Shown here piece by piece: positions 5,924-25,692 of a DNA stretch of 64,000 nucleotides. Below the pieces are notes generated by a model, which made no database searches, had not been told where the DNA came from, and worked only from the letters and a program-made list of their open reading frames with translations. Made by a program: the position numbers and the translations under genes. The stretch's first letter is position 1. Each line of letters starts with the position of its first letter. The stretch lies in the IMG/VR virus record IMGVR_UViG_3300046543_000266, positions 1 to 64,000 of that record; one strand, given 5' to 3'.

Positions 5924-6123
5924 ACGACACCGTATTCCACATCTTCCTGATCGTCTGGGGCGTGTATCACTTCTACACGGTATTCTGCTCGGTGTACAAC
6001 CAGGAAGTCCACAAAGATACGTCGCCGGTCGTAACCCGCTGGCGCTTTGTTGGCTACGTTCTTCTGGCAGAATACCTCGTCATCGTTGTGTGGGCGGCGT
6101 CGCTGCTCCACTTACAATTCTAA
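5920..6123 (+). CDS. small membrane protein
   Basis: 67 aa, two hydrophobic segments, ATGA coupling. Confidence 0.65.
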   Translation: MNDTVFHIFLIVWGVYHFYTVFCSVYNQEVHKDTSPVVTRWRFVGYVLLAEYLVIVVWAASLLHLQF

Positions 6124-6145
6124 CTTCATACCAAGGAACCACACC

Positions 6146-6475
6146 ATGTTCGCATTCAACAAGAAGGCCACCGAAATCCAAGCCGCCGTCGAATACTGCG
6201 CACCGCACTGGATCGTGGTGATCCGCAATCCGCGCGAGTCCAAGTGGACGCCGCTGCGATCGCTCACCAAGAAGGTGCGTGTGCAGGACGAGTTCGGCAA
6301 CGAGAAGTCCAGCCGTCCGGCGATCGAGAGCTTCGAATCCAAGCAGAAAGCCGATGTGTGGGTCAAGGAAAACATGCCTGGAGTCGCGCTGACGCAGCGT
6401 AGTTCGGTGGAGCGCAACAAGGATCACGAGTGGTTCGGTTCGTCGGGTCCTTCGATTAGCGGAGAAATGCAGTGA
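6146..6475 (+). CDS. hypothetical protein
   Basis: AAGGA SD before ATG 6146. Confidence 0.7.
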   Translation: MFAFNKKATEIQAAVEYCAPHWIVVIRNPRESKWTPLRSLTKKVRVQDEFGNEKSSRPAIESFESKQKADVWVKENMPGVALTQRSSVERNKDHEWFGSSGPSISGEMQ

Positions 6476-6478
6476 TCG

Positions 6479-6487
6479 TAGTAAATA
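6479..6487 (+). promoter_or_regulatory. TAGTAAATA box
   Basis: Exact motif just after stop 6475. Confidence 0.65.
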
Positions 6488-6555
6488 GACTGGCAAGCAA
6501 CGTTTCCCCCGCCACCAATTACATACCTGCATCAATCCCCTTGGACAGCGCAACC

Positions 6556-6873
6556 ATGAAGAACCTCGTTCCTCCCATTGGTACGATGGTGCCCATCCGC
6601 TCCGGTGACGCGTCGTTGTCGAAAGACGACAAGACGTATATGTGCCGCATCACGTTCGACGAATCCACGAAGACTTGGATCATCGCGTCGCGGTTCAATC
6701 AAGCAACCGGCCGGTGGGCGCCGACTACCAAACACAAACGTCTGGGCTTCATCGTGTTCCTCAACGACAAGCCGGACACCGACGATACCCATGTGCGTAT
6801 CTCGGCAATCCAGCCTTCCGGGCAGGGAGCATACGGTGACAGCATCAAGCAATCCACGGCCAGTGAGTCGTGA
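6556..6873 (+). CDS. hypothetical protein
   Basis: ATG 6556 in frame with ORF 6472..6873. Confidence 0.65.
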   Translation: MKNLVPPIGTMVPIRSGDASLSKDDKTYMCRITFDESTKTWIIASRFNQATGRWAPTTKHKRLGFIVFLNDKPDTDDTHVRISAIQPSGQGAYGDSIKQSTASES

Positions 6874-7546
6874 ACTGTCGGTGTTCCCGGCTCTCGATAT
6901 CGGTCGGCTAGCTCGATATCGGCAGTTACAGCAGCAGGTGACTGTTGCTCGCAATCGGTATTTCAAGTTTCATGCTCAGGTCTTGCAAATCGCCAACGAG
7001 TATTACGATGCGCTACCCGAAGCGGAAGTAGTTATCCGCTTGCGTCGTGAGATCCGTATGGCAAGCAAGGGCACTCCGGAGACGATGGCTGTAGACAGTA
7101 TTACGAGTGCTGGCTACGTATCGTTTGGAACTGAGCAGCTTTACAACGCAGAGGCGCATCTGGTGAAGAAGGCGTATCGTATGCTGGCTCCGATGGTTCA
7201 CCCCGATCGGTGCGGCGGCGATGTAACTCGCTTCCAGCTAGTAAATGCAGCATACCGGCTTCGCGATCTGACGTTTCTGCAGGAACTGTACATCCAGTTG
7301 GTGAAGGACAATCTGTGGTATCGCACCACGGACGAAGCCTTTGCATACCTGGAGCAGGAACTTCAGCGTCCGGCGGTGAGCACGATGTTGCTGCGCAGTC
7401 AGCCTGAGTTCACAATCGCACAGCTTCACCTGTCGGGAAACCTGGACGCAGCGCAAGCCACCGCCCGGCGCCGTATCCTGGAACTGGTCCGCACGCTCAA
7501 CAACGAGCTGGCCTACCTGCTAACGAAAACAACCCATCCCAACTAA
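6863..7546 (+). CDS. J-domain (DnaJ-like) protein
   Basis: VKKAYRMLAPMVHPDRCGGDVTRFQLVNAAY with HPD motif; GTG start inferred. Confidence 0.8.
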   Translation: MSRELSVFPALDIGRLARYRQLQQQVTVARNRYFKFHAQVLQIANEYYDALPEAEVVIRLRREIRMASKGTPETMAVDSITSAGYVSFGTEQLYNAEAHLVKKAYRMLAPMVHPDRCGGDVTRFQLVNAAYRLRDLTFLQELYIQLVKDNLWYRTTDEAFAYLEQELQRPAVSTMLLRSQPEFTIAQLHLSGNLDAAQATARRRILELVRTLNNELAYLLTKTTHPN

Positions 7547-10449: not shown

Positions 10450-11192
10450 ACAAGGCGATACCAGCGGCTACGAAACCCGCATCTAACTCTCCCACCGTAA
10501 TCCGCTTGACGAAGATCAAGCAGTGGTGGCTCCCAGTCGACGCCGAGTCCTACTTGGCTTTGCGCGAGGCCGGTGTGCCACTCGTCCGCTTTCATGTGGA
10601 CTTCCTCCCAGCGCTATCCCTCATTACGAAGAAGCATCGCATCCGTGCGAAGGAAGTATCCTTCAAGGATGAAATCCTGACGCCGTTCCTCAATCTGGTC
10701 GGCACCACCTGGAACAAGAAGCAACACTGCCGGGCAACCATCGCCGCGCGGTCCATGAAGTTCGAGACCCTGAAGCCCGAGGTCTACACGAAAGCGAAAG
10801 AGAGCATCACGAAGCTCACCGACATCCTCGAGAAGTTCTTTGTTCGGTGGGGCTTCAAATACCAGTTCGAGTACAGCGAGTCGCGCGGTAAGTGTAAATT
10901 GAATGTGGAGTACTACTTCGACAGCACCAAGATGCCGGTCATTCCTCTGGAGACCCCGGTCACTGATCTGCCGAAGGTCCAACTGAAGATCGGCTTTACG
11001 CGCATCACGATGACGTTCGGCGACCGCTATGTGGATACGCTGATCGAAGTCAGTCAGGGTGGCAAGTTCACCCCGTTGCACTCAACGCGTTGCACGTACT
11101 CGCAGATATCCTCAGTCAAACCTATGATCGCGGCACTCATGCAGGTGCCCGATCATGACATTCACAACTTCGACAACTCGGCCACCCCATGA
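10446..11192 (+). CDS. hypothetical protein
   Basis: 248 aa ORF coupled (ATGA) to neighbours. Confidence 0.75.
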   Translation: MNKAIPAATKPASNSPTVIRLTKIKQWWLPVDAESYLALREAGVPLVRFHVDFLPALSLITKKHRIRAKEVSFKDEILTPFLNLVGTTWNKKQHCRATIAARSMKFETLKPEVYTKAKESITKLTDILEKFFVRWGFKYQFEYSESRGKCKLNVEYYFDSTKMPVIPLETPVTDLPKVQLKIGFTRITMTFGDRYVDTLIEVSQGGKFTPLHSTRCTYSQISSVKPMIAALMQVPDHDIHNFDNSATP

Positions 11193-13870
11193 TTATGGCT
11201 CTCGCCAAAAAGAAAGTCGCCGCTCCGACAAAGAAGGCGGCTTCGTATTCGAGCAAGGACATCACAACCTTGCGCTTCCCGGACAACGTCCGCTCGAACC
11301 CTTCGATGTATCTTGGGTCGGTGGACGCCGCTGGTGTGTGGCTCACGGCCCGGGAATTGCTGGACAACGCGCTGGATGAGCATCTGGCGCACCGTAACGA
11401 CGCAGTCATGCTGCACGTCGATAAGGACGGCTCCTATTGGGTGCTGGATCGTGGTCACGGCGTGCCGCAGGGTGTGAAGAAGTTCAGCGTGCACGTCAAC
11501 GGCAAGGACATCGAGACGAAGATGCCCACGATGCAAGCCGTCTTCGGTGAACTGCATACGTCGGGCAAGTATCGCTCGGATGCATACGCAACCTCGGTTG
11601 GTACGCACGGCATCGGCGCCAAGGGCACCAACGCAACCTCGGAGTTCTTCGAGGTCTTCACGTTCTACGAAGGCCAGTGGTTCACCATCGGCTTCAAGAA
11701 GGGCAAGCTGGTCAAGCACGTCGCGAAGTGCAGCGCCCCGAAGGGTCCCGACGGCAAGACTGTTACCAAGGGCACGGTCATCCACTTCAAGCCGGATCCC
11801 ACGATCTTCACCGTCAAGTCCTTCCCACCCTCGATGGTGATGGAATGGGCCGACGTGATGTCGCATCTGAATCCCGGCTTCGCAATCGTCGTATCCAGCC
11901 CCAAGGGCAAGAAGCAGTTCCTGTCGAAAATCGGCCCGGCCGGTTACGTCCAGCAGCGCATCGAGAAGTTGAAGACCGAAGCTGAACGCCTGATGTTCGA
12001 GTACAAGTCGGATCTGGCGGACGTCGTGGTGGCCTTCTCGAACTATGACGGCTGCGACGTGCGCGGTTTCACGAACGGCCTGAACAATGCTCAGGGCGGC
12101 AAACATCTGGACGCTGTGACCGGCGCACTGTACGCGGGCCTCAAGCCCTACATCAAAACCAAGCGCGTGGAAGGGAAGCCGGTTCCGGTGTTCCGCGAGG
12201 CTGACTTCAAGGAAGGCTTGGTTGGTCTTGTCAACGCCAAGCTCCACAAGGCCGAGTTCAGTTCGCAGGACAAGGCACGGCTGACTGATGCTCGTATGGG
12301 TGCGGCGTTCGAGAAAGAGCTCACGCTGGCAACCATCAAGTTCTTCAAGGACAACAAGGCACTGGCACTGCGTCTGTGTGCGCGGGCCACAAAGCTCAAC
12401 GAACTGAAGACCAAGTTCACGTTGTCGAAGAAGGCTGCGTCCACGCTCAACGCTATGAAGCGCAACGGTCTGCCCGCCAAGTACGCTGGATTCGACAGCA
12501 AGACGAAGACCGAAGACCGCGAACTGTTCATCGTCGAAGGGGATTCGGCAGGTGGTACGGTCAAGAAGGGTCGCTTCCCGTATCAGGCAGTGCTGCCCCT
12601 CAAGGGCAAGATCATGAACGCGTTGAAGGATGGCAAGGGCAAGACGCTGGAGTCGGAGGAAATCCTGAACATCCTGGCGGCTATCGGCTTCGACGTCAAG
12701 GCAGTCGACCCGTATGCCAAGCTCACGGTCGGCAAGATTGTGTGTCTGGCTGACCCGGATCCGGACGGCCCCTTCATCGGCGACACCCGCATCAACTTCC
12801 GCTACAATACGCACGGCACGACGCAGTCGGCCAGCATCGAGTGCCTCGCCAAGATGGCAGCTGATGGTACGGAGTTCGTGGTTCCGGTGTGGAACGGCCA
12901 AACCGAAGTGTGGGCCAGCGCCAGCGCTCGCCTCGAACGCAACGTCGAGCAACTGGTTGCTCTCGAGATCGGCAAGACGAAGTACAAGGTCAGCGTCGAT
13001 CACAAGTGGCTGTGTGTTAAAACCGATGCGCTGCGCGGCCGCGACGTGGGCGAACATGCAGACAACCTCGTGTTCGTCAGGGCGGCTGATCTGAAGGTAG
13101 GCGACCGGGTGTTCATGCCCGCAGCTAACAACACGCGGGACAAGTCTAGCTGCGACTACGCGACGAAGCTCGGGTTCGCCCCAGTCTCGAAGATGCGCAT
13201 CCAGCAGTTGGACCAGCCGGTTCCGGTGTACTGTCTGAGCGTGCCGAAGTATCACCACTTCATGCTGCCTTCGGGTATCGTGTCGAGCAACTGCCACATC
13301 AACTCGTTGCTGCTCACGCTGTTCTACCGCTATCTGCCTGAGCTGTTCAGCCGGGGCATGGTGTTCGTTGCCAACAGCCCGGAGTTCTACAGCATCCACA
13401 AGAATCAGCTGGTGACCGGCGAGTCGCTGTCGGCAATGGGCAAGAACCTGAAGCGCATCAAGGCACCGGCCAACACGCCGATCCATCACATCAAGGGTTG
13501 GGGAGAAATCGATGCTCCGCTGATGCGCATCTTGGCAATGGACCCGGCCACGCGGAAGCTCATCAAGATTGGCGCAATCGAGCACGACGACAAGGTTGAC
13601 TTCGAGCGGCTCATGAACGACGACGTTGCCTATCGCCGTGACATGTTGGGCTTGCCGTCCAATGCCGTCGGCGGTGACGTGGAGGAGGAAGGCACTCCGA
13701 AGTCCAAGGCCGCACGTAAAGTACCTGTGAACAAAGCGGTCGTCGCAGCCAAGAAAATTGCGACAGCCAACCGGAAGATCGTTCACCGTCGCGATGAAAT
13801 CGAAGCCAAGCGCATCGAGAAGCGACGTGGCCTCCGTCCGGTGGGCAAGACGTTGCGCAAAGCCGCATAA
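11189..13870 (+). CDS. gyrB: type IIA topoisomerase ATPase/Toprim subunit (GyrB/ParE-like), intein-containing
   Basis: ELLDNALDE, DRGHG, GTHGIGAKGTNA (GHKL); IVEGDSAGG, PLKGKIMN, DPDPDG (Toprim). Confidence 0.95.
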   Translation: MIMALAKKKVAAPTKKAASYSSKDITTLRFPDNVRSNPSMYLGSVDAAGVWLTARELLDNALDEHLAHRNDAVMLHVDKDGSYWVLDRGHGVPQGVKKFSVHVNGKDIETKMPTMQAVFGELHTSGKYRSDAYATSVGTHGIGAKGTNATSEFFEVFTFYEGQWFTIGFKKGKLVKHVAKCSAPKGPDGKTVTKGTVIHFKPDPTIFTVKSFPPSMVMEWADVMSHLNPGFAIVVSSPKGKKQFLSKIGPAGYVQQRIEKLKTEAERLMFEYKSDLADVVVAFSNYDGCDVRGFTNGLNNAQGGKHLDAVTGALYAGLKPYIKTKRVEGKPVPVFREADFKEGLVGLVNAKLHKAEFSSQDKARLTDARMGAAFEKELTLATIKFFKDNKALALRLCARATKLNELKTKFTLSKKAASTLNAMKRNGLPAKYAGFDSKTKTEDRELFIVEGDSAGGTVKKGRFPYQAVLPLKGKIMNALKDGKGKTLESEEILNILAAIGFDVKAVDPYAKLTVGKIVCLADPDPDGPFIGDTRINFRYNTHGTTQSASIECLAKMAADGTEFVVPVWNGQTEVWASASARLERNVEQLVALEIGKTKYKVSVDHKWLCVKTDALRGRDVGEHADNLVFVRAADLKVGDRVFMPAANNTRDKSSCDYATKLGFAPVSKMRIQQLDQPVPVYCLSVPKYHHFMLPSGIVSSNCHINSLLLTLFYRYLPELFSRGMVFVANSPEFYSIHKNQLVTGESLSAMGKNLKRIKAPANTPIHHIKGWGEIDAPLMRILAMDPATRKLIKIGAIEHDDKVDFERLMNDDVAYRRDMLGLPSNAVGGDVEEEGTPKSKAARKVPVNKAVVAAKKIATANRKIVHRRDEIEAKRIEKRRGLRPVGKTLRKAA
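12770..13291 (+). mobile_element. 174 aa mini-intein, class-3-like, Pro at position 1
   Basis: Inserted between DPDPDG and CHINSLLL; PFIGDT..SVDHKWL..VYCLSV..HHF..GIVSSN|C; no LAGLIDADG motifs. Confidence 0.85.
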
Positions 13871-13879
13871 GGAATCGAC

Positions 13880-15463
13880 ATGGTAATCAAAAGACGAGTA
13901 GCGAAGCCCGAAGCCGACGATATGGACTTCGACAAACCCGCACCGCGCACACGGGCTCCGGCCCGTCGTGGCAAAGCGCCGGTCAAGCGGGTTCTGAAGG
14001 GTACTGAGGACAAGCACGTCGATAACGAAAGCATCCGTAGCTTCGGCAAGCGCAACATGACCACGTATGCTGTGGCGGTCAACCTCGATCGCAGCGTGCC
14101 TGACATGTACGACGGGTGGAAGCCTGTGCATCGCCGCATCATCTGGGCGGCTTCCACTCAGGCTCGCGACCTAACCAAGACGGCGCGGGTCGTGGGCGAT
14201 ACGCTTGGCAAGTATCACCCCCACGGTGACCGCAGCGTGGCCGACGCCATCGAGACGATGGTCAACATGCCTACTGCTCCGCTTTTGGGCAAGGGCAATT
14301 GGGGATCGATGATCGACAGCGCGGCAGCCATGCGATACACCAACATGAAGCTGTCGGCGTATGGCCTCACGTTCCTGAACCCGCACTACATCCACTCGGA
14401 AGTCACGTCGTTCGTACCCAACTACGACGACAAGGACGTGGAGCCGGTCACGCTTCCGGCGCAGTTGCCGAACGTGCTGATCAACGGCTCCGAGGGTATC
14501 GGCGTTGGCATTACCACTGGCTTGCCGTCGTTCACGCCTGAGTCGATGATCAGTGTGCTGGAGAGCATGCTCAAGGGTGAGAAGCTGAAGGCCGTCGACT
14601 TCGCGAAGCGCCTGAAGTTCGCTCACAAGTGGGGCGGGCAGATCGTCCAGTCGAAGGAGAACCGCTTATCAATGATGGGCATCTTCAACGGCAGCGTCGG
14701 CACTGTACAGTTCGAGTCGGCCATCGAAGTGGATCGTGACCGCAAGAGCATGACCATCGGCGACTGGCCTCCAGGCACTAACCTCGAGAAGTTCGTGGCG
14801 CGTGTCCGGGCCATGCCTGAATGTCAGCGCTGCTATAACAGCGAAGGCGTCACCAACTTCACGATCGAGTGCAAGCCCGCCTACAACTATGTGCAGTTCG
14901 ACAAGTTCGTTGAGAAGGTTCAGGCGGCGACTCGGCAGAAGCGCAACTACAAGATCAACGTAACGCAGCGTGTCGCCAACGATAACGACGGCGTCATTAG
15001 CTTCGAGACCAAGTTCTTGGCGCTGTCGGTGCCTGAGCTGATCTTGCAGTGGTTGCGTATGCGCCTCCAGTTGGAACTGAAAAGTCTGACGTTCCGGATC
15101 AAGAAGCAGGAAGCAGCCATCGCCTACTCCGAGCTCCTGATCTACGCGTGCGACAAACTGGATCTGATCTTCAAGGCGATTCGTAGCAGCGACCCGAAAG
15201 CCGCGATGGTAAAGCTGCTGAAGATCACCGAGGAGCAAGCCAAGCAAATCCTGGAGTTGCGCTTGTCACAACTCACGCGCATGGATCAAAGCGCGATGAA
15301 GGAAAAGCTGGCCGAGCAACGCAGTCATCACAAGCAACTGCTCGTGTGGCAGAAGAAGCCTCGCAGCAAGGTGCTTCTCGATCTCGAAGATGTCCGAGCC
15401 GCAATCGACAAGGACCGGAAGTTCGAAAACACCAAGGAAGAGCAGTCGCTTACGGTGGTGTAA
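13880..15463 (+). CDS. gyrA: type IIA topoisomerase breakage-reunion subunit (GyrA/ParC-like), no CTD pinwheel
   Basis: DGWKPVHRRI, KTARVVGDTLGKYHPHGD, AAMRYT (Tyr 14336-14338); only 527 aa. Confidence 0.95.
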   Translation: MVIKRRVAKPEADDMDFDKPAPRTRAPARRGKAPVKRVLKGTEDKHVDNESIRSFGKRNMTTYAVAVNLDRSVPDMYDGWKPVHRRIIWAASTQARDLTKTARVVGDTLGKYHPHGDRSVADAIETMVNMPTAPLLGKGNWGSMIDSAAAMRYTNMKLSAYGLTFLNPHYIHSEVTSFVPNYDDKDVEPVTLPAQLPNVLINGSEGIGVGITTGLPSFTPESMISVLESMLKGEKLKAVDFAKRLKFAHKWGGQIVQSKENRLSMMGIFNGSVGTVQFESAIEVDRDRKSMTIGDWPPGTNLEKFVARVRAMPECQRCYNSEGVTNFTIECKPAYNYVQFDKFVEKVQAATRQKRNYKINVTQRVANDNDGVISFETKFLALSVPELILQWLRMRLQLELKSLTFRIKKQEAAIAYSELLIYACDKLDLIFKAIRSSDPKAAMVKLLKITEEQAKQILELRLSQLTRMDQSAMKEKLAEQRSHHKQLLVWQKKPRSKVLLDLEDVRAAIDKDRKFENTKEEQSLTVV

Positions 15464-16116: not shown

Positions 16117-17397
16117 ATGGCTAAGGCACAAATCGCAGCATCCTCCAAGTCCAACGCAGCAGCAGCCAAGAAGGCGACGGCGAAGAAAGCATTCGCAGCC
16201 AAGAAGGTAGCGCCGAAGGCAAAAGTCGGCGCATCGGCCCGCAGTGGTAACGCAAAGCGTGGTGCCGAGCAGCGCGTCAAGGTAAGCCAGGATGCTGTGA
16301 AGGCATTCGCGTTCCCGACTCGCAAGTCGATGAAAGCGCTCGCCAAGACTCTGACTGTCGGCACTGTGGTTGGTGAAAAGGGTGGTCAGGAGCGCGTCGG
16401 TATGGTCCACGCTGTACCGGGAAGCGGCTCCACGATCCCGACAGGCACGGTCGGCGTCATCTGGGACGAGGGCAAAGGCGTGGAAGTCTACGCGGTCGGA
16501 ATGCTGGAAGTCGTGAAGAACCCGAGCAAGCTCCTGAAGGCGGATATCGGCACCGCCATCGAACAGAACCGCGAGTACGCGAAGCTCGCCAAGAAGTACA
16601 CACTCGGTGCCGAAGTGCAAGAGCTTCAGGAACCCAAGCGTCACGGCATCGTGCAAGCGGTCGCGGCGAAAGGCAGTGGTTACGTGACTGTGCAGTTCGG
16701 TATCGCAGTCGAGGCCAAGCATGTAGGCGACCTCAAGCTGTTGGGCCAGCATCAAGCGCTTCTGGCCCCGACGACTTCGGCTCCGGTTGTCCACACCGCA
16801 TGGGAAGTCGGCACCCGCGTTGAGCATCCGACACACGGATTGGGTGTCGTGGCTATCAGCGCAGAAGGTATGCCCGACGACGTCGCCACCGTCCACTTCG
16901 ATGACGGTGATCAAGTGGCGAAGGAAATCGCAGCCAGCGAACTGAAAGTGATCAACGATACGTTTGCAGTTGGCGAGATCGTCGAGCACGCGGAACACGG
17001 TATGGGTCGCATCGAGACGCTGCATCCCAACGCCACTACCGCAGCGGTTCGTTTCCTGGACGCTGACGTGGTTGTTACGCGCAAGCTCAGCGAATTGCAT
17101 TCGCTCAAGGACGCAGAGATCACCATCGAGCGCGCCGCCGATGCCGCAGTCACGCCGGTCTCGAAGGTCAAGCGCGTCCGCTTCGATGAGCTCGGGCTGT
17201 TCGAAGCGTTCGTCCACGAAGACCGCACGCATGTCAAGGTCGGCAACACTAGCGCGCTCCGCGTTGTCGTCGCCGGAATCACGAGCGAGCCGTTCGCAAT
17301 GCTGGCAACCCAGGAATCGAAACTGGTGAAGGATGCCAAGGTGCGCTTCCGTCTGAAAGACAAGGTCGCCCGTTACGCAGTTCACGCCGCGCAGTAA
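16117..17397 (+). CDS. K/A-rich tail + tandem SH3/Tudor-like repeat protein
   Basis: Repeats VGTRVEHPTHGLGVV..ATVHF and VGEIVEHAEHGMGRI..AVRF, plus two weaker copies. Confidence 0.75.
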   Translation: MAKAQIAASSKSNAAAAKKATAKKAFAAKKVAPKAKVGASARSGNAKRGAEQRVKVSQDAVKAFAFPTRKSMKALAKTLTVGTVVGEKGGQERVGMVHAVPGSGSTIPTGTVGVIWDEGKGVEVYAVGMLEVVKNPSKLLKADIGTAIEQNREYAKLAKKYTLGAEVQELQEPKRHGIVQAVAAKGSGYVTVQFGIAVEAKHVGDLKLLGQHQALLAPTTSAPVVHTAWEVGTRVEHPTHGLGVVAISAEGMPDDVATVHFDDGDQVAKEIAASELKVINDTFAVGEIVEHAEHGMGRIETLHPNATTAAVRFLDADVVVTRKLSELHSLKDAEITIERAADAAVTPVSKVKRVRFDELGLFEAFVHEDRTHVKVGNTSALRVVVAGITSEPFAMLATQESKLVKDAKVRFRLKDKVARYAVHAAQ

Positions 17398-17548: not shown

Positions 17549-18034
17549 ATGGCAACGCAAATCAACGCAGTTCAAGCAGCTCGCTCGGTCGCACAAACGG
17601 TCGCTCAACTCACGCGCAAAGTTGCACAGCAAGAAAAGCTGATCGCTCGTCTGCAAGCGAAGGGCAACGGCGCGGCGAAGCCGGTTCGTGCAGCAAAGGG
17701 TCCGAAGGCTGCTCCGGCTGCGAAGAAGGCTGGCAAGATCGTGCGCGAAGCGCGTGAAGGTCGCGGCGCAGCGAAGAACGTGAAGGTCAACGCGAAGGCG
17801 GCTGGTCGTGCTGGCAAGGCATCGGCAGAAGACGACGAAGACGCTCCGGTTGCGAAGCGCGTGAAGGTCGCTGGCAAGGCTGGTCGCGTGGTGAAGGGTC
17901 CGAAGGCTGTCGCAGGCAAGCAAGGTCCGGTCGCGAAGAAGCAAGCAGCGGGCAAGGGTCCGAAGGCTGCTCCGGCGAAGGCTGGCAAGCCGGTCAAGGC
18001 TGCGAAGAAGGGCGGCGACGACTTCCTGCTGTAA
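17549..18034 (+). CDS. histone-H1-like basic protein with N-terminal coiled coil
   Basis: AAGGA SD; KGPKAAPAKAGKP repeats; ends GGDDFLL. Confidence 0.8.
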   Translation: MATQINAVQAARSVAQTVAQLTRKVAQQEKLIARLQAKGNGAAKPVRAAKGPKAAPAAKKAGKIVREAREGRGAAKNVKVNAKAAGRAGKASAEDDEDAPVAKRVKVAGKAGRVVKGPKAVAGKQGPVAKKQAAGKGPKAAPAKAGKPVKAAKKGGDDFLL

Positions 18035-18192: not shown

Positions 18193-19206
18193 GTGAAAAA
18201 CGTACAGCGCGTAGCAGATACAAACTTTGATCGCTTCCAGGCCAAGCAAGGTCTGACTGCGAAGAACCAGTCGCAAATGACGAAACTCCTGCCGATGTTG
18301 CAGGTTGGTAGCAAGGCCGGACCTGACGACGCACAGGTCCTCGCTAAGATGGAAGCACGGCTCACCGCGCTCAAAGAATTGCGGGCATCGTTGCACAAGA
18401 CGACGATCTCCCTAGCCAAGCTCCACATAGTAGACAAGGAGCAACAGCTGAAGAAACTCACGATCGCACGCAAGAAGGTGGTGGCGATCGCCGAATCGAA
18501 ACCGCCGGTCGGCGTGTCCAAAGCATTGCGCGCATGTCTGAACGAACTGACGTCGCTGCGCGAGGGTGTGTACGTCGGCACCGCCACTACCCGCAAGACG
18601 CTGGCAATCGTGGCGTGCAGCGATGCTGTCGAGCATGTCGATGGTCTGATCGCCAAGACGACGAAGCGCCTCGAAGCTGCGAAGTCGCAGACGCAAGCTG
18701 GCTCCGGCGATCCGGTGTTCCAGGACGAAGTGGTGAAGGTCATCCAGCGCACGGCCGAAGACGCACACAAGCTGGAGTCGCTGAAGGGCAAGTCGTTCGT
18801 CGTGTGTCGCGTCCCGGTGGTTGCTGTCGCGAAGACGATGCTCGACGCCAACAAGTTGAAAGCCAAGGGCTTCAAGGCCGAAGACATCGGCGGGTATCCG
18901 GTCCTGCACAATCAGCTGGTGATCGGTATCAACAAGGCGATGCTCAACCTCAAGAAGAACGAGATGGACGAGCAAGGTAACAGCCTCAAGCCACTGAGCA
19001 CCGACCGTTGGGTCAACGCCGCCGATCAAGTGCTGGCGATGATCCGCAAGCAGACGAAGGTCAAGTATCAGCTGGTGGATGCGCGTCCGTACGGACATGC
19101 TGGTGGTGCGTGGTTCTGGGCGATGCCGGAACGTGATCTGAATCTGTTTGCTACGTCGTTCCCGGGCAAGGCAGTTTCCCTGCAATCGTGGGGCTTCGGC
19201 TTCTAA
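18193..19206 (+). CDS. hypothetical protein
   Basis: GGAG SD before GTG 18193; long ORF. Confidence 0.75.
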   Translation: MKNVQRVADTNFDRFQAKQGLTAKNQSQMTKLLPMLQVGSKAGPDDAQVLAKMEARLTALKELRASLHKTTISLAKLHIVDKEQQLKKLTIARKKVVAIAESKPPVGVSKALRACLNELTSLREGVYVGTATTRKTLAIVACSDAVEHVDGLIAKTTKRLEAAKSQTQAGSGDPVFQDEVVKVIQRTAEDAHKLESLKGKSFVVCRVPVVAVAKTMLDANKLKAKGFKAEDIGGYPVLHNQLVIGINKAMLNLKKNEMDEQGNSLKPLSTDRWVNAADQVLAMIRKQTKVKYQLVDARPYGHAGGAWFWAMPERDLNLFATSFPGKAVSLQSWGFGF

Positions 19207-19224
19207 CAGGCGGAGGTGCCAACC

Positions 19225-19737
19225 ATGCTTGTCCATCAACTGGTAGTGCTTCCGACGCCGGAAACTCTCGACTATCTCGGGAAAGTGTTTTCGGCGTGTC
19301 CGTTCAACCTCGATCTGTCGCAAGCGTATGTCGAGATAAACAGCTCGCAGACGTCGATGGTTCCCGACACTGCCCGCATCTACACGGCGCGAGCAGGAAA
19401 TCTGCAGGTGTTCTACGACGCGTCCACTCAGCAGACGTCGTTGCTGTTGCCGTTGCACAGTCCGGCGCTCGAATCGCGCGTTTCCGAACTGCGGGAGTCT
19501 GCGCCGTCTGCGTTCTACGGCGAGCACTACTTCCCGAATCTGGTGCTGGTCCGCGGAATGCCGCCGCTGGCTCGGACGTACCGCTCGTTCATTGCCAGTG
19601 TTGCAACCACGCTGGCGAGCGATCCCAACCAAGTGTTGACGTTCGACGCCGAGCTCGTGATGTCCAAGGATTTCCACACCATCCCGGACGCCGACTACTA
19701 CGAATCGCAGTTGGCAAACAACTTCGCACGTCGTTGA
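19225..19737 (+). CDS. Acb1/T4 gp57B-like 2H phosphoesterase fold, catalytic His absent
   Basis: GGAGG SD; ETLDYL, AGNLQVF, SLLLPLHSPALESR, YFPNLVL align by eye with recalled gp57B. Confidence 0.5.
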   Translation: MLVHQLVVLPTPETLDYLGKVFSACPFNLDLSQAYVEINSSQTSMVPDTARIYTARAGNLQVFYDASTQQTSLLLPLHSPALESRVSELRESAPSAFYGEHYFPNLVLVRGMPPLARTYRSFIASVATTLASDPNQVLTFDAELVMSKDFHTIPDADYYESQLANNFARR

Positions 19738-19754: not shown

Positions 19755-19796
19755 GCACGCGGAGCAGTTTTACAACTCCGCGTGCCCTAGTAAATA
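19755..19796 (+). promoter_or_regulatory. hairpin followed by TAGTAAATA box
   Basis: GCACGCGGAG/CTCCGCGTGC stem 19755-19785; motif 19788-19796. Confidence 0.65.
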
Positions 19797-19899: not shown

Positions 19900-20352
19900 A
19901 TGGACTCAATCGTCCTTCCACATTGTTGGGTCTGTGAGAAACGTTTCACAGATGCCAGTCCACCCGGACCCGCCAACAAGGAAATCCACCACATCATCCC
20001 TCGTCAGGCTGGTGGATCCGACGGACCGACAGTTACGATTTGTGACGGTCATCACGCGGCGCTCCACAAGATTGCGCTGCGTATGAAAAGCGGCAAACCC
20101 CACTTCGATCTTCTGGTAGGCGACACACCGCCCCAGAAGCAGAAGGTGCTTTGGCTGGCGTCCCGGGTCCACATCGCGTTCGAGGCCGTCAAGAATGACC
20201 CGAACAAGAAGGTGGTGGTAGTCATGGGTCTCAACGCACAGCAGCAGTTGATGATTGATCGCCTCAAGAAAGTGTATCCCACCCTGAAGTCTCGCGAGGC
20301 CATTTTCAATCTCGCACTTCAGAACCTTTACAACCGTCACTTCCAGGAGTAA
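19900..20352 (+). CDS. HNH endonuclease with C-terminal RHH-like segment
   Basis: CWVC..EIHHIIPRQAGGSDGPTVTICDGHHAALH. Confidence 0.8.
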   Translation: MDSIVLPHCWVCEKRFTDASPPGPANKEIHHIIPRQAGGSDGPTVTICDGHHAALHKIALRMKSGKPHFDLLVGDTPPQKQKVLWLASRVHIAFEAVKNDPNKKVVVVMGLNAQQQLMIDRLKKVYPTLKSREAIFNLALQNLYNRHFQE

Positions 20353-20356
20353 GTTC

Positions 20357-20743
20357 ATGGATGAAATCAAAACCGGTGAAGTTATCATCGTCCACCTGAC
20401 CAACGGTCAGACCATCGTTGGCAGGGGTGCTCCCAACATCGACTCCGTCGAGGACGGCTTGCTGCTCGACTCGCCCCACGAATTGATTGGTGGTCAGCGC
20501 CCGGACGGCACTCTTGGCTTCGGGATGCAACCGTATCTGTCGATGGGTGGTCTGCTTCCGGCGTTTGAGCGCTTCGCCTTCGAGTGGGACAACATCGTCA
20601 CCGCCCGCGAATGTCCGGAGCAGATTCAGCGTGCGTTCCTGGAACTGACGAGTGGACTGCAGATTGCCAAGACGCTGCCGACCGGTGGACAAAACGGGCA
20701 AGGCCGACCCACAAACCCGGCCAGTTTGCTAGTGGTGCCCTAA
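20357..20743 (+). CDS. hypothetical, possible Sm-like fold
   Basis: IIVHLTNGQTIVG start pattern (weak). Confidence 0.6.
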   Translation: MDEIKTGEVIIVHLTNGQTIVGRGAPNIDSVEDGLLLDSPHELIGGQRPDGTLGFGMQPYLSMGGLLPAFERFAFEWDNIVTARECPEQIQRAFLELTSGLQIAKTLPTGGQNGQGRPTNPASLLVVP

Positions 20744-21074: not shown

Positions 21075-21749
21075 ATGCTGAAGAAAGACACTCTTGGTAG
21101 TGCCAGTGCCAAATCCCTCGATGAGGCCTTCAAATGTGGTGAGTGCGTACACTTCAAGCAGCACGCGCACTCCAGTCGTCAGCAGGTATGTTCAAAAGAA
21201 GGGATACGTGCCGTCGGCATCGCCCCTAAGTGTTTCACCCCGGACGTTACGGTCATCGCCCAGAACTCCGACCACTTCGTCCAGGTCGCAGCAATGTTTC
21301 AGTCGTTCACACCAAAGCAGCGCCGCATCTTTCTGGCGCTCCTGCGCAGCAACAAGAAGAAGCCGCACGCGATGGGAACCAAGCTGTACTTCAAGGTCGG
21401 CAAGGATTTCATCAGCAACTACCTGTGCGGTTATGTCGCGGGCTACACATCCAGTGGCGAGCTCATGCTCATCGGCAGCCCGGATCGCAAAACTCGTGGT
21501 ACGTCGTTCGTGTCTTACCTTGCTCCTGATAGTGCTGGACTGCTTACTGCCTCTGAATGGAAAGTGAAACGTCAATCCTTGAAGGAACGCAATCTGATTC
21601 ACGATCCCTCAAATCGTGTGATCAAGCGTGCCTCGGTCGTAGACAACTACGAACCGCCGACCATCGACAACGCCCCGTCGTCGTGGTACGACAAAAAGGA
21701 ACCGGTCAAGCGCCGGAAGACGGATTCACTTTCCTTCAACATCAGTTAA
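21075..21749 (+). CDS. hypothetical protein with Cys cluster
   Basis: CGECVHF..C..C; ATG 21075 in frame. Confidence 0.7.
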   Translation: MLKKDTLGSASAKSLDEAFKCGECVHFKQHAHSSRQQVCSKEGIRAVGIAPKCFTPDVTVIAQNSDHFVQVAAMFQSFTPKQRRIFLALLRSNKKKPHAMGTKLYFKVGKDFISNYLCGYVAGYTSSGELMLIGSPDRKTRGTSFVSYLAPDSAGLLTASEWKVKRQSLKERNLIHDPSNRVIKRASVVDNYEPPTIDNAPSSWYDKKEPVKRRKTDSLSFNIS

Positions 21750-21766: not shown

Positions 21767-22711
21767 TTGTTACGGCAACTTTTGGGTCTCCGGCCTTCGG
21801 AGATGGCGAAAATCGGCGGGGCCGTTTTCGCCTACTTGTTTCATCGGATCACACAGCGCGAGCTCGTGGCGATCATCGATGATAAAGAGAAAGAGGAACG
21901 TATCCTTGAAGTCGTTAGACGCAAGGGCTACGTTCTTCGAGACTGCAAACTGTACGCTTGGGCGGCGTACCGTGCGCGTTTCGGCTATCCCAAGCCAAGC
22001 ATTAAAGAGTTCGGTGTTACTCGAAGGGACGCCGCCTTCTTGTCCCGGCTCAATCTCGGTCACTTGTCCATTGACTTCGAGTCTTACAATTTGGAAGACT
22101 TCAAGGCTCTTGTAGAAGGCACGGTGAAGAGTCCGACCATGGATGCATACATCGGACGCTTCATTAGCAAGAAGATGTTGTTCTTAACTCGCAGTTACGG
22201 GGTGAAGCGCAGTGATCTCGAATCCGACATGCTGTCCGGCGCTCTGCGTGCCGTGTACATGCACTTCCCGAGATTCGAGTCGCTGCTGCATTTCACAAAT
22301 GTGGCAAAGGCGGCAATCCATAACACTGGTATGTCGCTCATCACGTACCACACCAGTCCAGCCCGACAACGGCTGTTTATCAACGAGAGCGGTGGCTTCG
22401 AGGCGACCCACGTCGATGTGGACGTGATGTCCAGCGTCGAGGCACCGCAGCAATACATGGCCCACGCGAAGGAATCCCTGGAGGTCCTCGTAAAGCTGGC
22501 GCACAAAATGCGTCCCGATGTTCAACGGTTCTTGTTGTGTTGTGCAGGTCACTACGACGAGGGATTCTCGGACTACCTGGAAACCGATAACTCCTTGGCC
22601 GTAGATAGCATGGCGTACTCGCGGTATCTGGGTAAGGCCCGGAAGTACTTCGAGTTCAGTGAAACGCAGGTACAGAAACTCTTCGAGAAATTGAAGATGC
22701 ATTTAGAGTAA
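21767..22711 (+). CDS. putative sigma-70-family phage sigma factor
   Basis: Region-2-like RSDLESDMLSGALRAVYMHF..HFTNVAKAAIHN..LI; region-4-like C-terminal FSETQVQKLFEKL; TTG start after GAGG inferred. Confidence 0.55.
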   Translation: MLRQLLGLRPSEMAKIGGAVFAYLFHRITQRELVAIIDDKEKEERILEVVRRKGYVLRDCKLYAWAAYRARFGYPKPSIKEFGVTRRDAAFLSRLNLGHLSIDFESYNLEDFKALVEGTVKSPTMDAYIGRFISKKMLFLTRSYGVKRSDLESDMLSGALRAVYMHFPRFESLLHFTNVAKAAIHNTGMSLITYHTSPARQRLFINESGGFEATHVDVDVMSSVEAPQQYMAHAKESLEVLVKLAHKMRPDVQRFLLCCAGHYDEGFSDYLETDNSLAVDSMAYSRYLGKARKYFEFSETQVQKLFEKLKMHLE

Positions 22712-23809: not shown

Positions 23810-23934
23810 AGTAGTCGTTCATCTTGTTTCGCTTGTAGCACTTTGCAGTATAGGCCAATCTAAAATCACAAACGGGACACACCGACCCTTCCCAAACAAT
23901 CATCGGTGTGTCCCTTAAAACAAAGGTAATAAAA

Positions 23935-25692
23935 ATGAAAAAGACGACCATCGCAATCGCAATCCTGTCCTCGTTCGCAGCTCCGGCATTCGCAACGCAG
24001 TACGTGGCCTACGACACGGTTCCGGGCAGTCACGGCCAGTCGGAAGTGGACTACGGCAACGTCACGATGCAGGGTACGAACGGCACGAAGATCCACAACG
24101 TCGCGGCGGGTACGTCAGGCACGGATGCAGTCAATGTCAACCAGCTGAACAGCGCAATCGCTACGGTCAAGACCCAGAAGGGCGATACCGGCGCGACGGG
24201 TGCCACAGGTGCTCAAGGGGTCGCGGGTAAGGACGGCAAGAACGGCATCGATGGTAAGAACGGCATCGATGGTAAGAACGGCATCGATGGAGCAGCGGGT
24301 GCGACCGGCGCTCAAGGCGTCGCAGGTAAGGATGGTGCGAAGGGCGACACTGGCGCACAGGGTATCCAGGGTGTGAAAGGCGATAAGGGTGAGAAGGGCA
24401 ACACTGGCGCTTCTGTTGCTGGCGTGTCTATCAACGGCACGACTGTGACGACAACGCTCGACAACGGTTCGCAGGTGAACGGCACTATCACGGGTCTGGC
24501 TACGACGGAGCAGTTGAACCAGACGAACGTCAACGCCAGCGCTCTGGGTTCGAAGGTGGACCAAGCTACCACGACGGCGAATCAAGCCAAGTCCATCGCA
24601 CAAGGGGCAGACGCCAAGTCGAACACGGCAATCGGCATCGCCGCCGGAGCAGCTATCACCGCGACCGGTGCAGCCATCGTCAGCGGCATCGCCTACGAGA
24701 AGGCTGACAATGCTCAGCAAGTCGCTGGTCAGGCCAACGCCACGTCCAACCAAGCGAAGAACATCGCTCAAGGTGCGGCGTACCAAGCCAGTCACGCAGA
24801 CCAAGTCGCGGCTGAAGCCAACACGACGGCAGGTAAGGCAACCGTCACAGCACAGGCAGCAGATGCGAAGTCGGACATCGCACTGGCAACCGGCGTGAAG
24901 AACAGCGGTGACATCAACAAGCTGAACGCGGGCTTGGCGACTACCAACTCGCATGTCGCGCAGAACACGGCAGACATAGCGGCCAATCAGCAAGCCATCC
25001 GCTCGGAAGCTGGCCGTGCTCAAGACGCTGAGTGGAAGCTGGGATCAGCGATCACGTCGGAAACGTCGCGCGCAACGGCTGCCGAGCAGGGCATCCAGTC
25101 GCAAGTGACGGGCAACACGAAGAGCATCAACAATCTCAACGCACGCCAAGCCAACACCGAAGCGTGGATCGGAAATGCGAACGCGGGAGCCATCGGTCAA
25201 GGCTCGCAAGTGAAGGCGAACAACGCAGTTGCACTCGGTGCTGGCTCCGTGGCAGATCGTGACAATACCGTGTCCGTAGGCGCTGCTGGTCAGGAGCGTC
25301 AGGTCACCAACGTCGCAGCCGGTACGCAAGCAACCGACGCGGTGAACGTGTCGCAGCTGAACAGCTACATGCGTCAGACAGCAAAGGCGGTGGACAACTC
25401 GAATGCCTACACGGATCAGCGAGTCAACGCTCTGCAGTCGTCGTTCGATAGCTTCAAGAAGGATACCTACGGCGGCATCGCAACGGCGCTGGCAATTGCA
25501 GGACTGCCGCAGCCGACGGCTCCGGGTCGTTCGATGGTGTCGGTGGCGGGTTCCACGTATCACGGGGCAACCGGTCTGGCCGCTGGCTACTCGCAGGTAA
25601 CGCAAGACGAGCGTTGGGTGATGAAGGCGTCGGTTACCACGAGCAACCGTGGCGACTTCGGTGCTGTGCTCGGCGCTGGTCGTCAATTCTGA
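23935..25692 (+). CDS. trimeric autotransporter adhesin (YadA-like) with collagen-like G-X-Y segment
   Basis: Signal peptide MKKTTIAIAILSSFAAPAFA; VAAG..TDAVNVxQL necks; GXY repeats; AVALGAGSVA head; anchor GIATALA..GAGRQF. Confidence 0.92.
   Translation: MKKTTIAIAILSSFAAPAFATQYVAYDTVPGSHGQSEVDYGNVTMQGTNGTKIHNVAAGTSGTDAVNVNQLNSAIATVKTQKGDTGATGATGAQGVAGKDGKNGIDGKNGIDGKNGIDGAAGATGAQGVAGKDGAKGDTGAQGIQGVKGDKGEKGNTGASVAGVSINGTTVTTTLDNGSQVNGTITGLATTEQLNQTNVNASALGSKVDQATTTANQAKSIAQGADAKSNTAIGIAAGAAITATGAAIVSGIAYEKADNAQQVAGQANATSNQAKNIAQGAAYQASHADQVAAEANTTAGKATVTAQAADAKSDIALATGVKNSGDINKLNAGLATTNSHVAQNTADIAANQQAIRSEAGRAQDAEWKLGSAITSETSRATAAEQGIQSQVTGNTKSINNLNARQANTEAWIGNANAGAIGQGSQVKANNAVALGAGSVADRDNTVSVGAAGQERQVTNVAAGTQATDAVNVSQLNSYMRQTAKAVDNSNAYTDQRVNALQSSFDSFKKDTYGGIATALAIAGLPQPTAPGRSMVSVAGSTYHGATGLAAGYSQVTQDERWVMKASVTTSNRGDFGAVLGAGRQF
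24235..24288 (+). repeat. 3 x 18 bp tandem repeat (GKNGID)
   Basis: GG(C/T)AAGAACGGCATCGAT x3. Confidence 0.9.

What the first reader, a model, noticed from the sequence alone, without database searches (positions are those of the whole stretch)
19225..19737. Acb1/gp57B-like 2H fold with both catalytic histidines replaced: candidate pseudo-enzyme
By-eye alignment to the recalled T4 gp57B (Acb1) sequence: ETLDYL/LTLDAL, AGNLQVF/SGHLEVW, SLLLPLHSPALESR/TLVLVLDSEYLRCR, YFPNLVL/YTPHITL. The two HxT/S motifs read YVE and NLV here. Established: Acb1 degrades CBASS cyclic nucleotides via those histidines. Inference: a catalytically dead version that binds nucleotide signals or has a new role.
Basis: inference. 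Interest (0 to 1): 0.6.

Follow-up and report, generated by a model that had tools for sequence, protein, structure and literature searches.

The report
Histidine-less Acb1-like phage pseudo-enzyme
A jumbo-phage gene encodes a protein with the fold of the anti-CBASS nuclease Acb1 but with all four catalytic residues replaced, and it belongs to a large, undescribed, selectively maintained family sitting in a conserved gene cassette where some other phages still carry an active-looking enzyme.

Summary
Window 19225-19737 (+) is a real 170-aa gene in a complete 217.6-kb phiRSL1/BcepSauron-like jumbo phage from rhizosphere metagenomes. Its confident model (pLDDT 89.7) is a 2H phosphoesterase fold. 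The closest solved structures are Acb1 of Burkholderia phage BCSR5 (Z 16.3) and of Erwinia phage FBB1 (Z 13.2). No histidine is conserved in the family.

New findings:
- An exhaustive search finds 120 cluster representatives. Most lack both HxT/S motifs, and the losses recurred on the tree.
- dN/dS is about 0.15, so the gene is under purifying selection.
- The gene always lies in a conserved cassette: A, 2H-like, HNH-like C, D, E, usually after the topoisomerase II genes.
- In five metagenomic contigs the same slot holds a His-intact protein that passes Pfam's Acb1 threshold.
- The phage carries a separate intact Acb1 at about 142 kb, outside the window.

Best reading: a pseudo-enzyme derived in place from an Acb1-type enzyme, now acting by binding rather than cleaving. 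Its ligand or partner is unknown, and a role as a signal sponge is neither shown nor excluded. No paper in the searched library describes this family.

The parts
19225..19737 (+). Gene B: 170-aa histidine-less Acb1-like 2H-fold protein (P0001)
   Evidence: ORF and translation. AF2 model pLDDT 89.7, pTM 0.85. 2H/Acb1 fold matches. dN/dS 0.15-0.17.
19212..19216 (+). Shine-Dalgarno-like GGAGG, 8 nt before the ATG
   Evidence: Read directly from the sequence.
19327..19335 (+). Remnant of 2H motif 1: Y35-V36-E37 in place of H-x-T (T4 Acb1 H44/T46)
   Evidence: hhalign and MAFFT mapping. In His-less members position 35 is variable (Y/F/H/G/R) and position 37 is E in 46/102.
19537..19545 (+). Remnant of 2H motif 2: N105-L106-V107 in place of H-x-T/S (T4 Acb1 H113/T115)
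   Evidence: BLASTP, hhalign and MAFFT. In His-less members position 105 is Y/H/F/N and position 107 is V/I.
18193..19206 (+). Gene A: 337-aa cassette partner directly upstream. N-terminal helical bundle plus C-terminal alpha/beta domain. Function unknown.
   Evidence: Homologues align from residue 27 of the longer ORF. 65 homologues. Model pLDDT 84.5. No convincing structural match. Found upstream of gene B in every locus examined.
19900..20352 (+). Gene C: 150-aa HNH-like zinc-finger protein, the conserved downstream partner
   Evidence: Invariant C9, C12, H30, H31, C48, H51, H52, H56 in 85 homologues. Weak matches to Pfam HNH, NCBIfam and PHROG 338. Follows gene B in all loci that extend far enough.
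20357..20743 (+). Small cassette gene c' (128 aa), present in most but not all related loci
   Evidence: BLASTP across loci.
21075..21749 (+). Gene D: about 225-aa Cys-containing cassette protein
   Evidence: PHROG 17701 at E 3.9e-51, labelled 'DNA topoisomerase' by PHROGs. Conserved in all loci.
21767..22711 (+). Gene E: about 314-aa cassette protein. A sigma-factor-like role is only a lead. The start coordinate is approximate.
   Evidence: Conserved in all loci. PHROG 19229. Atlas feature search lists a Sigma70_r2 viral cluster at 0.96, a lead only.
11189..15463 (+). Topoisomerase II subunit genes (GyrB-like 11189-13870, GyrA/ParC-like 13880-15463) that lie upstream of the cassette in most related phages
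   Evidence: Pfam DNA_gyraseB, Toprim, DNA_topoisoIV. Same arrangement in BcepSauron, Motura, BCSR5, L021 and L028.

Best explanation
Gene B encodes a pseudo-enzyme. It is an Acb1-type 2H phosphoesterase scaffold that lost the whole HxT/HxT catalytic tetrad while staying in its ancestral genomic slot. It can no longer perform the metal-independent acid-base cleavage of 3'-5' phosphodiester bonds that defines Acb1. It is kept by purifying selection as a core gene of phiRSL1/Sarumanvirus-like jumbo phages, inside a conserved early/DNA-metabolism cassette (A, B, HNH-like C, D, E) that usually follows the topoisomerase II genes. I infer that it works by binding rather than catalysis, as a non-catalytic module of the tightly packed A-B-C unit. 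It would use the remodelled cleft or the conserved scaffold surface to hold a partner protein, a nucleic-acid end or a nucleotide. Cyclic-nucleotide degradation in this phage would fall to the separate intact Acb1 at about 142 kb.

Shown: the fold, the loss of the tetrad, selection, synteny, and the presence of a separate gene with intact Acb1 motifs. Inferred: loss of activity, the binding role and the partner.
For: - Fold: the AF2 model has pLDDT 89.7. Its nearest solved structures are Acb1 of BCSR5 (9q2g, Z 16.3) and of FBB1 (7t27, Z 13.2), then plant CPDase, Usb1 and LigT. BFVD and ESM Atlas neighbours are Acb1 clusters.
- Homology: hhalign to an Acb1 profile gives 90.9% probability. Some His-less relatives still score weakly on PF23474: P0028 at E 2e-5, P0030 at 5e-4, the BCSR5 orthologue at 0.02.
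- Tetrad lost: H44/T46/H113/T115 correspond to Y35/E37/N105/V107. H44A/H113A abolishes T4 Acb1 activity (PMC9117128).
- No replacement site: positions 35 and 105 vary within the family, and no new polar constellation is conserved. The near-invariant positions of 63 members (P10, T14, Y53, A55, L77, P104, F140, E143) are mostly kept in His-intact members too.
- Selection: dN/dS is 0.154 at dS 0.57 and 0.169 at dS 1.18.
- Family: 120 representatives at E<=1e-3. 102 of 131 aligned rows lack both motifs. Starred branches force at least 7 changes of the His-less state.
- Cassette: the A-B-C-(c')-D-E order is kept in 11 loci down to 25-35% identity. Stop/start overlaps occur in Motura, BcepSauron, L023, L024, L032 and L033.
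- Same slot, intact motifs: five His-intact proteins over Pfam's Acb1 cut-off (P0065, P0083, P0113, P0090, P0074) are flanked by A and/or C homologues.
- Division of labour: an intact Acb1 (HTT and HIS motifs; E 5.7e-30 to 9q2g) lies elsewhere in this genome. BCSR5, BcepSauron and Motura have one too. phiRSL1 lacks it but keeps gene B.
Against: - No direct evidence of binding to anything.
- The one complex prediction (A+C+B) gave no verdict, so it counts neither way.
- Conserved gene order in a phage core region need not mean physical or functional partnership.
- In this window B and C are 162 bp apart with a hairpin between them, unlike the overlapping arrangement in other lineages.
- Loss of activity is inferred from residues, not measured. 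Some pseudo-enzymes keep activity through relocated residues.
- A, D and E have no assigned function, so the cassette's role is unknown.
Confidence: 0.45

Rival explanations
1. Signal sponge. The dead Acb1 scaffold still binds cyclic oligonucleotide (or other nucleotide) immune signals and sequesters them without cleavage, like Acb2, Acb4, Tad1 or Tad2 but on a 2H fold.
For: The fold and ancestry are those of a cyclic-nucleotide-binding enzyme. The W74-equivalent base-stacking position is aromatic in 70% of His-less members, the F107-equivalent in about 70%, and the catalytic His positions are often replaced by Y/F. A conserved C-terminal aromatic segment (P154, D157, Y158/Y159) could stand in for the Acb1 lid. 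Repeated loss of catalysis with retention of the protein fits a function where binding is enough. Non-specific degradation can be costly to a phage, since Acb1 triggers Panoptes (bioRxiv 10.1101/2025.08.21.671373).
Against: The Thr that contacts the scissile phosphate is replaced by Glu in 46/102 His-less members and the second Thr by Val/Ile. That puts negative charge and hydrophobic bulk where the phosphate sits. Y12, another stacking residue, is Q5 here. The gene is core and syntenic rather than patchy like typical anti-defence genes. No oligomer or ligand test was possible.
Confidence: 0.2
2. Repurposed enzyme. The scaffold gained a new catalytic activity using other residues (for example E37, N39, S41, D65).
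For: E37, N39 and S41 lie on the former motif-1 strand and are conserved among the 18 closest homologues. Pseudo-enzymes with migrated catalytic residues are known in general (PMC10211241, listed; abstract only read).
Against: Across the wider His-less clade these positions are not conserved: N39 is N/A/G/M/I and E37 is E in under half. The 63-sequence alignment has no invariant column. The best-conserved polar residues (D65, R85, E143) are shared with His-intact members.
Confidence: 0.1
3. Prozyme-like regulator. The dead paralogue binds and modulates the phage's own active Acb1.
For: Dead and active 2H proteins occur together in this genome and in BCSR5, BcepSauron and Motura.
Against: phiRSL1 keeps the dead copy but has no PF23474 match anywhere in its 231 kb. 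The two genes lie about 120 kb apart. In some phages the cassette slot itself holds a His-intact protein. Not tested by complex prediction.
Confidence: 0.05
4. A relic with no function of its own, carried along because it lies inside a conserved operon.
For: Its catalytic motifs are degenerate, and it is less conserved than its neighbours C and D.
Against: The reading frame is intact in all 120 representatives and across phage genera. dN/dS is about 0.15. The model is confident and well packed. The scaffold residues are strongly conserved.
Confidence: 0.05

Closest known systems
Acb1 (anti-CBASS protein 1; T4 gp57B, Erwinia phage FBB1 Acb1 PDB 7T26/7T27, Burkholderia phage BCSR5 '2H PDE-9' PDB 9Q2G/9Q2Y; Pfam PF23474)
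   Same: Same compact 2H fold (Z 13-16). Detectable profile homology. Shared scaffold residues (Y53, Y64, D65, R85, P104, F140, E143) and an aromatic at the W74 position. Phage-encoded and of similar size.
   Different: All four residues of the HxT/HxT tetrad are replaced. It does not reach the Pfam Acb1 threshold or even get reported. It lacks the N-terminal lid of PDE-9: the model aligns to PDE-9 residues 15-165. It has a C-terminal helix instead. It sits in a conserved cassette after the topoisomerase genes rather than where the phage's true Acb1 lies.
Cellular and viral 2H phosphoesterases (LigT, plant CPDase 1FSI, Usb1, coronavirus ns2, rotavirus VP3, poxvirus cGAMP PDE)
   Same: Same superfamily fold (Z 8-10).
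   Different: All of these keep the two HxT/S motifs. This protein has neither.
Non-catalytic uses of the 2H fold (AKAP7/AKAP18 central domain, which binds AMP; the 2H-like trypanosomatid mitoribosomal small-subunit protein in 6HIW/7PUB)
   Same: The 2H fold is used as a binding or structural module. Both appear among the structural matches (Z about 8).
   Different: They are eukaryotic and show no specific sequence relationship. That AKAP7 keeps its histidine motifs is from my own knowledge, not tested here.
Phage nucleotide sponges (Acb2, Acb4, Tad1, Tad2)
   Same: This is only the proposed mode of action under the sponge rival: stoichiometric sequestration of immune signals (Acb4 paper, bioRxiv 10.1101/2024.12.30.630793, listed).
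   Different: The folds are unrelated. No binding evidence exists for this protein.

Membership tests
2H phosphoesterase superfamily | Two-lobed alpha/beta 2H fold with a central cleft | tested here: met
   AF2 model pLDDT 89.7. Foldseek and VIA-align matches are almost all 2H proteins, Z 16.3 down to about 6.
2H phosphoesterase superfamily | Two H-x-T/S motifs on the two cleft strands | tested here: not met
   The motifs read Y-V-E and N-L-V. No histidine is conserved in the family.
Acb1 (Pfam PF23474) | Score above the curated Pfam gathering threshold (27 bits) | tested here: not met
   PF23474 is not reported for P0001 even at E<=10. The genome-wide PF23474 search finds only the other gene, at 142 kb. 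The BCSR5 orthologue scores 11.8 bits.
Acb1 (Pfam PF23474) | Catalytic tetrad H44/T46/H113/T115 (T4 numbering) | tested here: not met
   The equivalents are Y35/E37/N105/V107. The role of the tetrad is from PMC9117128.
Acb1 (Pfam PF23474) | Base-stacking aromatics Y12, W74, F107 and lid W147 | tested here: inconclusive
   Y12->Q5, W74->F63, F107->F97/Y98, W147->Y158 (the last is a weak alignment). Aromatics persist at the W74 and F107 positions in about 70% of His-less members. No 3D ligand modelling was possible.
Acb1 (Pfam PF23474) | Cleavage of 3'3'-cGAMP and other CBASS signals; protection of phage from CBASS | not testable with these tools
   Needs biochemistry and plaque assays.
Cyclic-nucleotide sponge (functional class) | High-affinity stoichiometric binding of an immune signal without turnover | not testable with these tools
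   The complex predictor does not score ligands as partners.
Pseudo-enzyme (operational class) | Homology to an enzyme family, loss of its catalytic residues, and evidence of retained function | tested here: met
   Homology and fold, tetrad lost, dN/dS about 0.15 and wide conservation. Absence of activity itself was not measured.

The most novel reading that the evidence does not exclude
The His-less proteins are the first immune-signal sponges, or signal-sensing regulators, built on the 2H fold. They would have arisen repeatedly from Acb1-type nucleases inside one conserved jumbo-phage cassette. The driver could be host systems that punish indiscriminate signal degradation, with a more selective Acb1 gained elsewhere in the genome taking over catalysis.
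Probability: 0.15. Interest if true: 0.8.

Novelty: new variant of a known kind. Interest (0 to 1): 0.6.

Why it matters
Acb1-type 2H nucleases are a main way phages and animal viruses destroy cyclic-nucleotide immune signals. The largest structure-based survey so far kept only hits with intact histidines: 75 of 84 (bioRxiv 10.1101/2025.08.21.671373). This work shows a large branch, at least about 100 sequence clusters, in which the catalytic tetrad has been lost repeatedly. The protein nevertheless stays under selection in a fixed genomic slot next to an HNH-like protein.

That gives a natural series from enzyme to pseudo-enzyme in one gene position. The two forms can be compared directly in culturable phages (BCSR5, BcepSauron, Motura, phiRSL1). 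It also warns annotators that an 'Acb1-like fold' does not imply anti-CBASS nuclease activity.

Tried and rejected
- **Sequence-only searches.** Pfam, PHROGs, NCBIfam and PDB searches with P0001 or its family profile gave nothing usable. Only fold and profile-profile methods linked it to Acb1.
- **BCSR5 structure identity.** I first suspected that 9Q2G might be the BCSR5 orthologue of this protein. It is not. 9Q2G is the other BCSR5 2H protein, the true Acb1.
- **Complex prediction.** Complex prediction with A + C + B (B as partner, own alignments) scored ipSAE 0.00 against a mark of 0.32. The verdict was 'no answer', so it is not evidence for or against binding.
- **Gene A.** Folding gave a helical bundle plus an alpha/beta domain. 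Foldseek found nothing at E<=0.001, and the VIA-wide matches were generic helical bundles. The atlas feature search gave no usable hit. A JGI label of 'endonuclease V' on one homologue found no support.
- **Gene E.** A sigma-factor lead from the atlas has no Pfam support.
- **Expression.** No RNA run holds the region, only rhizosphere DNA metagenomes.
- **Charge.** Net charge and pI do not separate His-less from His-intact members.
- **Literature.** Searches for a described His-less Acb1 or 2H pseudo-enzyme found nothing. Iyer et al. 2021 cite only Motura's intact 2H protein.
- **IMG/VR scan.** It returned only five extra loci.

Full report
**The gene and its genome.** The window is the first 64 kb of a complete 217,605-bp virus record with direct terminal repeats. 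The region's DNA has no close match among deposited phage genomes. Its proteins place it with the phiRSL1, BcepSauron/BcepSaruman, Motura and BCSR5 jumbo phages of Ralstonia, Burkholderia and Achromobacter. The DNA occurs in rhizosphere metagenomes. The finding's coordinates match an ORF from ATG 19225 to the stop at 19735-19737, encoding 170 aa (P0001). GGAGG lies 8 nt upstream. The list also shows a GTG start at 19216, but all homologues begin at the ATG-encoded MLV.

**Checking the observation.** Pfam, PHROGs, NCBIfam and PDB sequence searches find nothing for the protein. I fetched T4 gene 57B from NC_000866. A profile of 18 homologues against a small Acb1 profile gives hhalign probability 90.9%, E 1.2e-6. 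That alignment places AYVEI on FHTTV and YFPNLV on YTPHIS.

**The fold.**
- The AlphaFold2 model built on the 18-sequence alignment is confident: mean pLDDT 89.7, pTM 0.85.
- Foldseek against the PDB ranks first the 'phosphodiesterase from Burkholderia phage BCSR5' (9Q2Y/9Q2G, E 6e-9, TM 0.71).
- Next come FBB1 Acb1 (7T27/7T26, E about 7e-6), then plant CPDase, Usb1, poxvirus cGAMP PDE and LigT-like proteins.
- VIA-align gives Z 16.3 (rmsd 2.2 over 144 residues) to 9Q2G and Z 13.2 to 7T27.
- BFVD and the ESM Atlas return Acb1 clusters.

**Catalytic positions.** A 131-row MAFFT alignment maps T4 residues onto the target as follows:

| T4 Acb1 | Target |
|---|---|
| H44 | Y35 |
| T46 | E37 |
| H113 | N105 |
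| T115 | V107 |
| Y12 | Q5 |
| W74 | F63 |
| F107 | F97/Y98 |

In Acb1 the HxT/HxT tetrad performs metal-independent acid-base catalysis, and H44A/H113A is inactive (PMC9117128). The 18 closest homologues share no invariant histidine.

**A second, intact Acb1 in the same phage.**
- A PF23474 search of the whole genome finds one match over the cut-off, at about 141.9-142.4 kb on the minus strand, outside the window.
- It encodes a 169-aa protein with intact H-T-T and H-I-S motifs.
- It matches 9Q2G at E 5.7e-30.
- 9Q2G is the BCSR5 Acb1, called '2H PDE-9'. It cleaves 3'3'-cGAMP, largely spares 2'3'-c-di-AMP, and uses H50/H123 with an N-terminal lid (bioRxiv 10.1101/2025.08.21.671373).
- BCSR5, BcepSauron and Motura also carry both proteins. 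phiRSL1 has only the His-less one.
- The target model aligns to PDE-9 residues 15-165, so it lacks that N-terminal lid.

**Size and history of the family.**
- The word-based search found 18 clusters.
- The exhaustive profile search found 120 representatives at E<=1e-3, 76 of them at E<=1e-10.
- In the 131-row alignment, which includes five Acb1 controls, 102 rows lack both HxT/S motifs, 19 have both (14 of them search hits), 8 keep only motif 2 and 2 keep only motif 1.
- A FastTree tree separates a 102-row, mostly His-less group from a 29-row group that holds the Acb1 controls. That basal split is weak (support 75).
- The target sits inside a starred 67-row clade with no fully intact member.
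- The His-less label needs 14 changes on the tree, and starred branches alone force at least 7. Loss was therefore recurrent.
- Several His-intact members pass Pfam's Acb1 threshold, and two motif-2-only members fall just below it.

**Residue statistics**. In His-less members:
- the H44 position is Y/F/H/G/R;
- the T46 position is E in 46 of 102;
- the H113 position is Y/H/F/N;
- the T115 position is V or I in 57 of 102.

Y53, Y64, D65, R85, P104, F140 and E143 are kept in both groups. Nothing new is conserved at the former active site: the 63-row alignment has no invariant column. This argues against a newly evolved catalytic site. The Glu and Val at the phosphate-contacting positions argue against canonical phosphodiester binding. 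The retained aromatics at the W74 and F107 positions leave base binding open.

**The gene is functional.** dN/dS between the window gene and two metagenomic orthologues is 0.154 (dS 0.57) and 0.169 (dS 1.18). More distant pairs are saturated.

**Genomic context.** In BcepSauron, Motura, BCSR5 and phiRSL1 the orthologue has the same neighbours. BLASTP across 11 loci, including very divergent metagenomic contigs (L021, L023, L024), shows a conserved order:
- A, about 305-337 aa;
- B, the 2H-like protein;
- C, an HNH-like protein of about 150 aa;
- sometimes a small gene c';
- D, about 225-240 aa;
- E, about 310-380 aa.

The cassette usually follows the GyrB-like and GyrA-like topoisomerase II genes. 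Stop and start codons of A/B and B/C overlap in several lineages. In this window B and C are 162 bp apart. Protein C keeps an invariant Cys/His set typical of HNH zinc fingers. BcepSauron has an RNA ligase gene inserted between D and E.

**The same slot holds intact enzymes elsewhere.** All five His-intact proteins over Pfam's Acb1 cut-off whose contigs I examined lie in the same slot. P0065, P0083, P0090 and P0074 have an A homologue upstream and a C homologue downstream, and P0065 also has D and E. P0113 has the A homologue only, and its downstream gene gave no match. The slot is therefore ancestral and has held active-looking Acb1-type enzymes. Most lineages, including this one, lost the catalytic residues without losing the gene.

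**Interpretation.** The well-supported part is that this is a pseudo-enzyme derived from an Acb1-type 2H phosphoesterase, functional and core to its phage lineage. The mechanism is inferred.
- **Favoured: non-catalytic binding role in the A-B-C unit.** The gene is core and syntenic, translationally coupled to its neighbours in many lineages, and keeps only scaffold residues.
- **Sponge rival.** It remains possible and would be the most interesting outcome. The Glu/Val substitutions at the phosphate site and the gene's core-like distribution count against it.
- **Other rivals.** A neo-enzyme, a prozyme for the phage's own Acb1 and a functionless relic are each disfavoured by specific results given in the rival explanations.
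- **What gave no help.** The single complex prediction gave no verdict. The fold of protein A gave no functional clue.

**Novelty.** Neither the Acb1 paper, nor the 2025 survey of viral 2H PDEs, nor the jumbo-phage comparative study describes a His-less branch. The survey discarded hits without intact histidines. The comparative study cites only Motura's intact 2H protein. Two text searches found nothing. I rate it a new variant of a known kind.

**Limits.**
- The tree is a FastTree tree with a weak deep split.
- The motif tallies depend on an alignment of very divergent sequences.
- No RNA data exist for this phage, and read laying was not used.

Noticed in passing
window 11189-13870 (+): The GyrB-like topoisomerase II subunit is 893 aa, against 647 aa for the homologue on contig L021 and 672 aa (from the annotated coordinates) in Motura. 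It has a weak Pfam Intein_splicing match at residues 624-700 (E 0.0024). This may be an intein or another insertion. The L028 relative is 918 aa.
   Followed up: partly
window 23908-25692 (+): A 594-aa phage protein combines collagen triple-helix repeats, YadA stalk repeats and a YadA-like membrane anchor (E 7e-14, 1.3e-18, 5e-14). This is the architecture of a trimeric autotransporter adhesin, found inside a jumbo phage.
   Followed up: no
G000:C1 about 141899-142408 (-), outside the window (locus L011:1384-1893): The phage's true Acb1: 169 aa, intact HTT and HIS motifs, PF23474 at 49.6 bits, E 5.7e-30 to the solved BCSR5 Acb1 (9Q2G). It lies beside a 403-aa ORF of unassigned function.
   Followed up: yes
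window 19755-19785: A perfect 10-bp inverted repeat (arms 19755-19764 and 19776-19785, 11-nt loop) lies just after the stop codon of the target gene, in the 162-bp gap before the HNH-like gene. No T-run follows it, so it is not a classical intrinsic terminator.
   Followed up: no
window 16117-17397 (+) and 17549-18034 (+): Two proteins carry long Lys/Ala/Pro-rich tracts that look histone-H1-like or AlgP-like. The first also has a weak CarD/TRCF RID-like match. They may be DNA-binding proteins between the topoisomerase genes and the cassette.
   Followed up: no
window 21767-22711 (+): Cassette protein E has language-model neighbours that include a viral cluster carrying Sigma70_r2 (score 0.96). 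Pfam gives no support. It may be a phage sigma-like factor.
   Followed up: partly
L002 (BcepSauron) 6101-7219: An RNA ligase gene is inserted between cassette genes D and E in BcepSauron only. This hints that the cassette may be linked to RNA end processing.
   Followed up: no
L001 (phiRSL1) 353-1097: The phiRSL1 homologue of cassette protein A is annotated as two overlapping ORFs (ORF002 and ORF003). This suggests a frameshift or sequencing error in that record.
   Followed up: no
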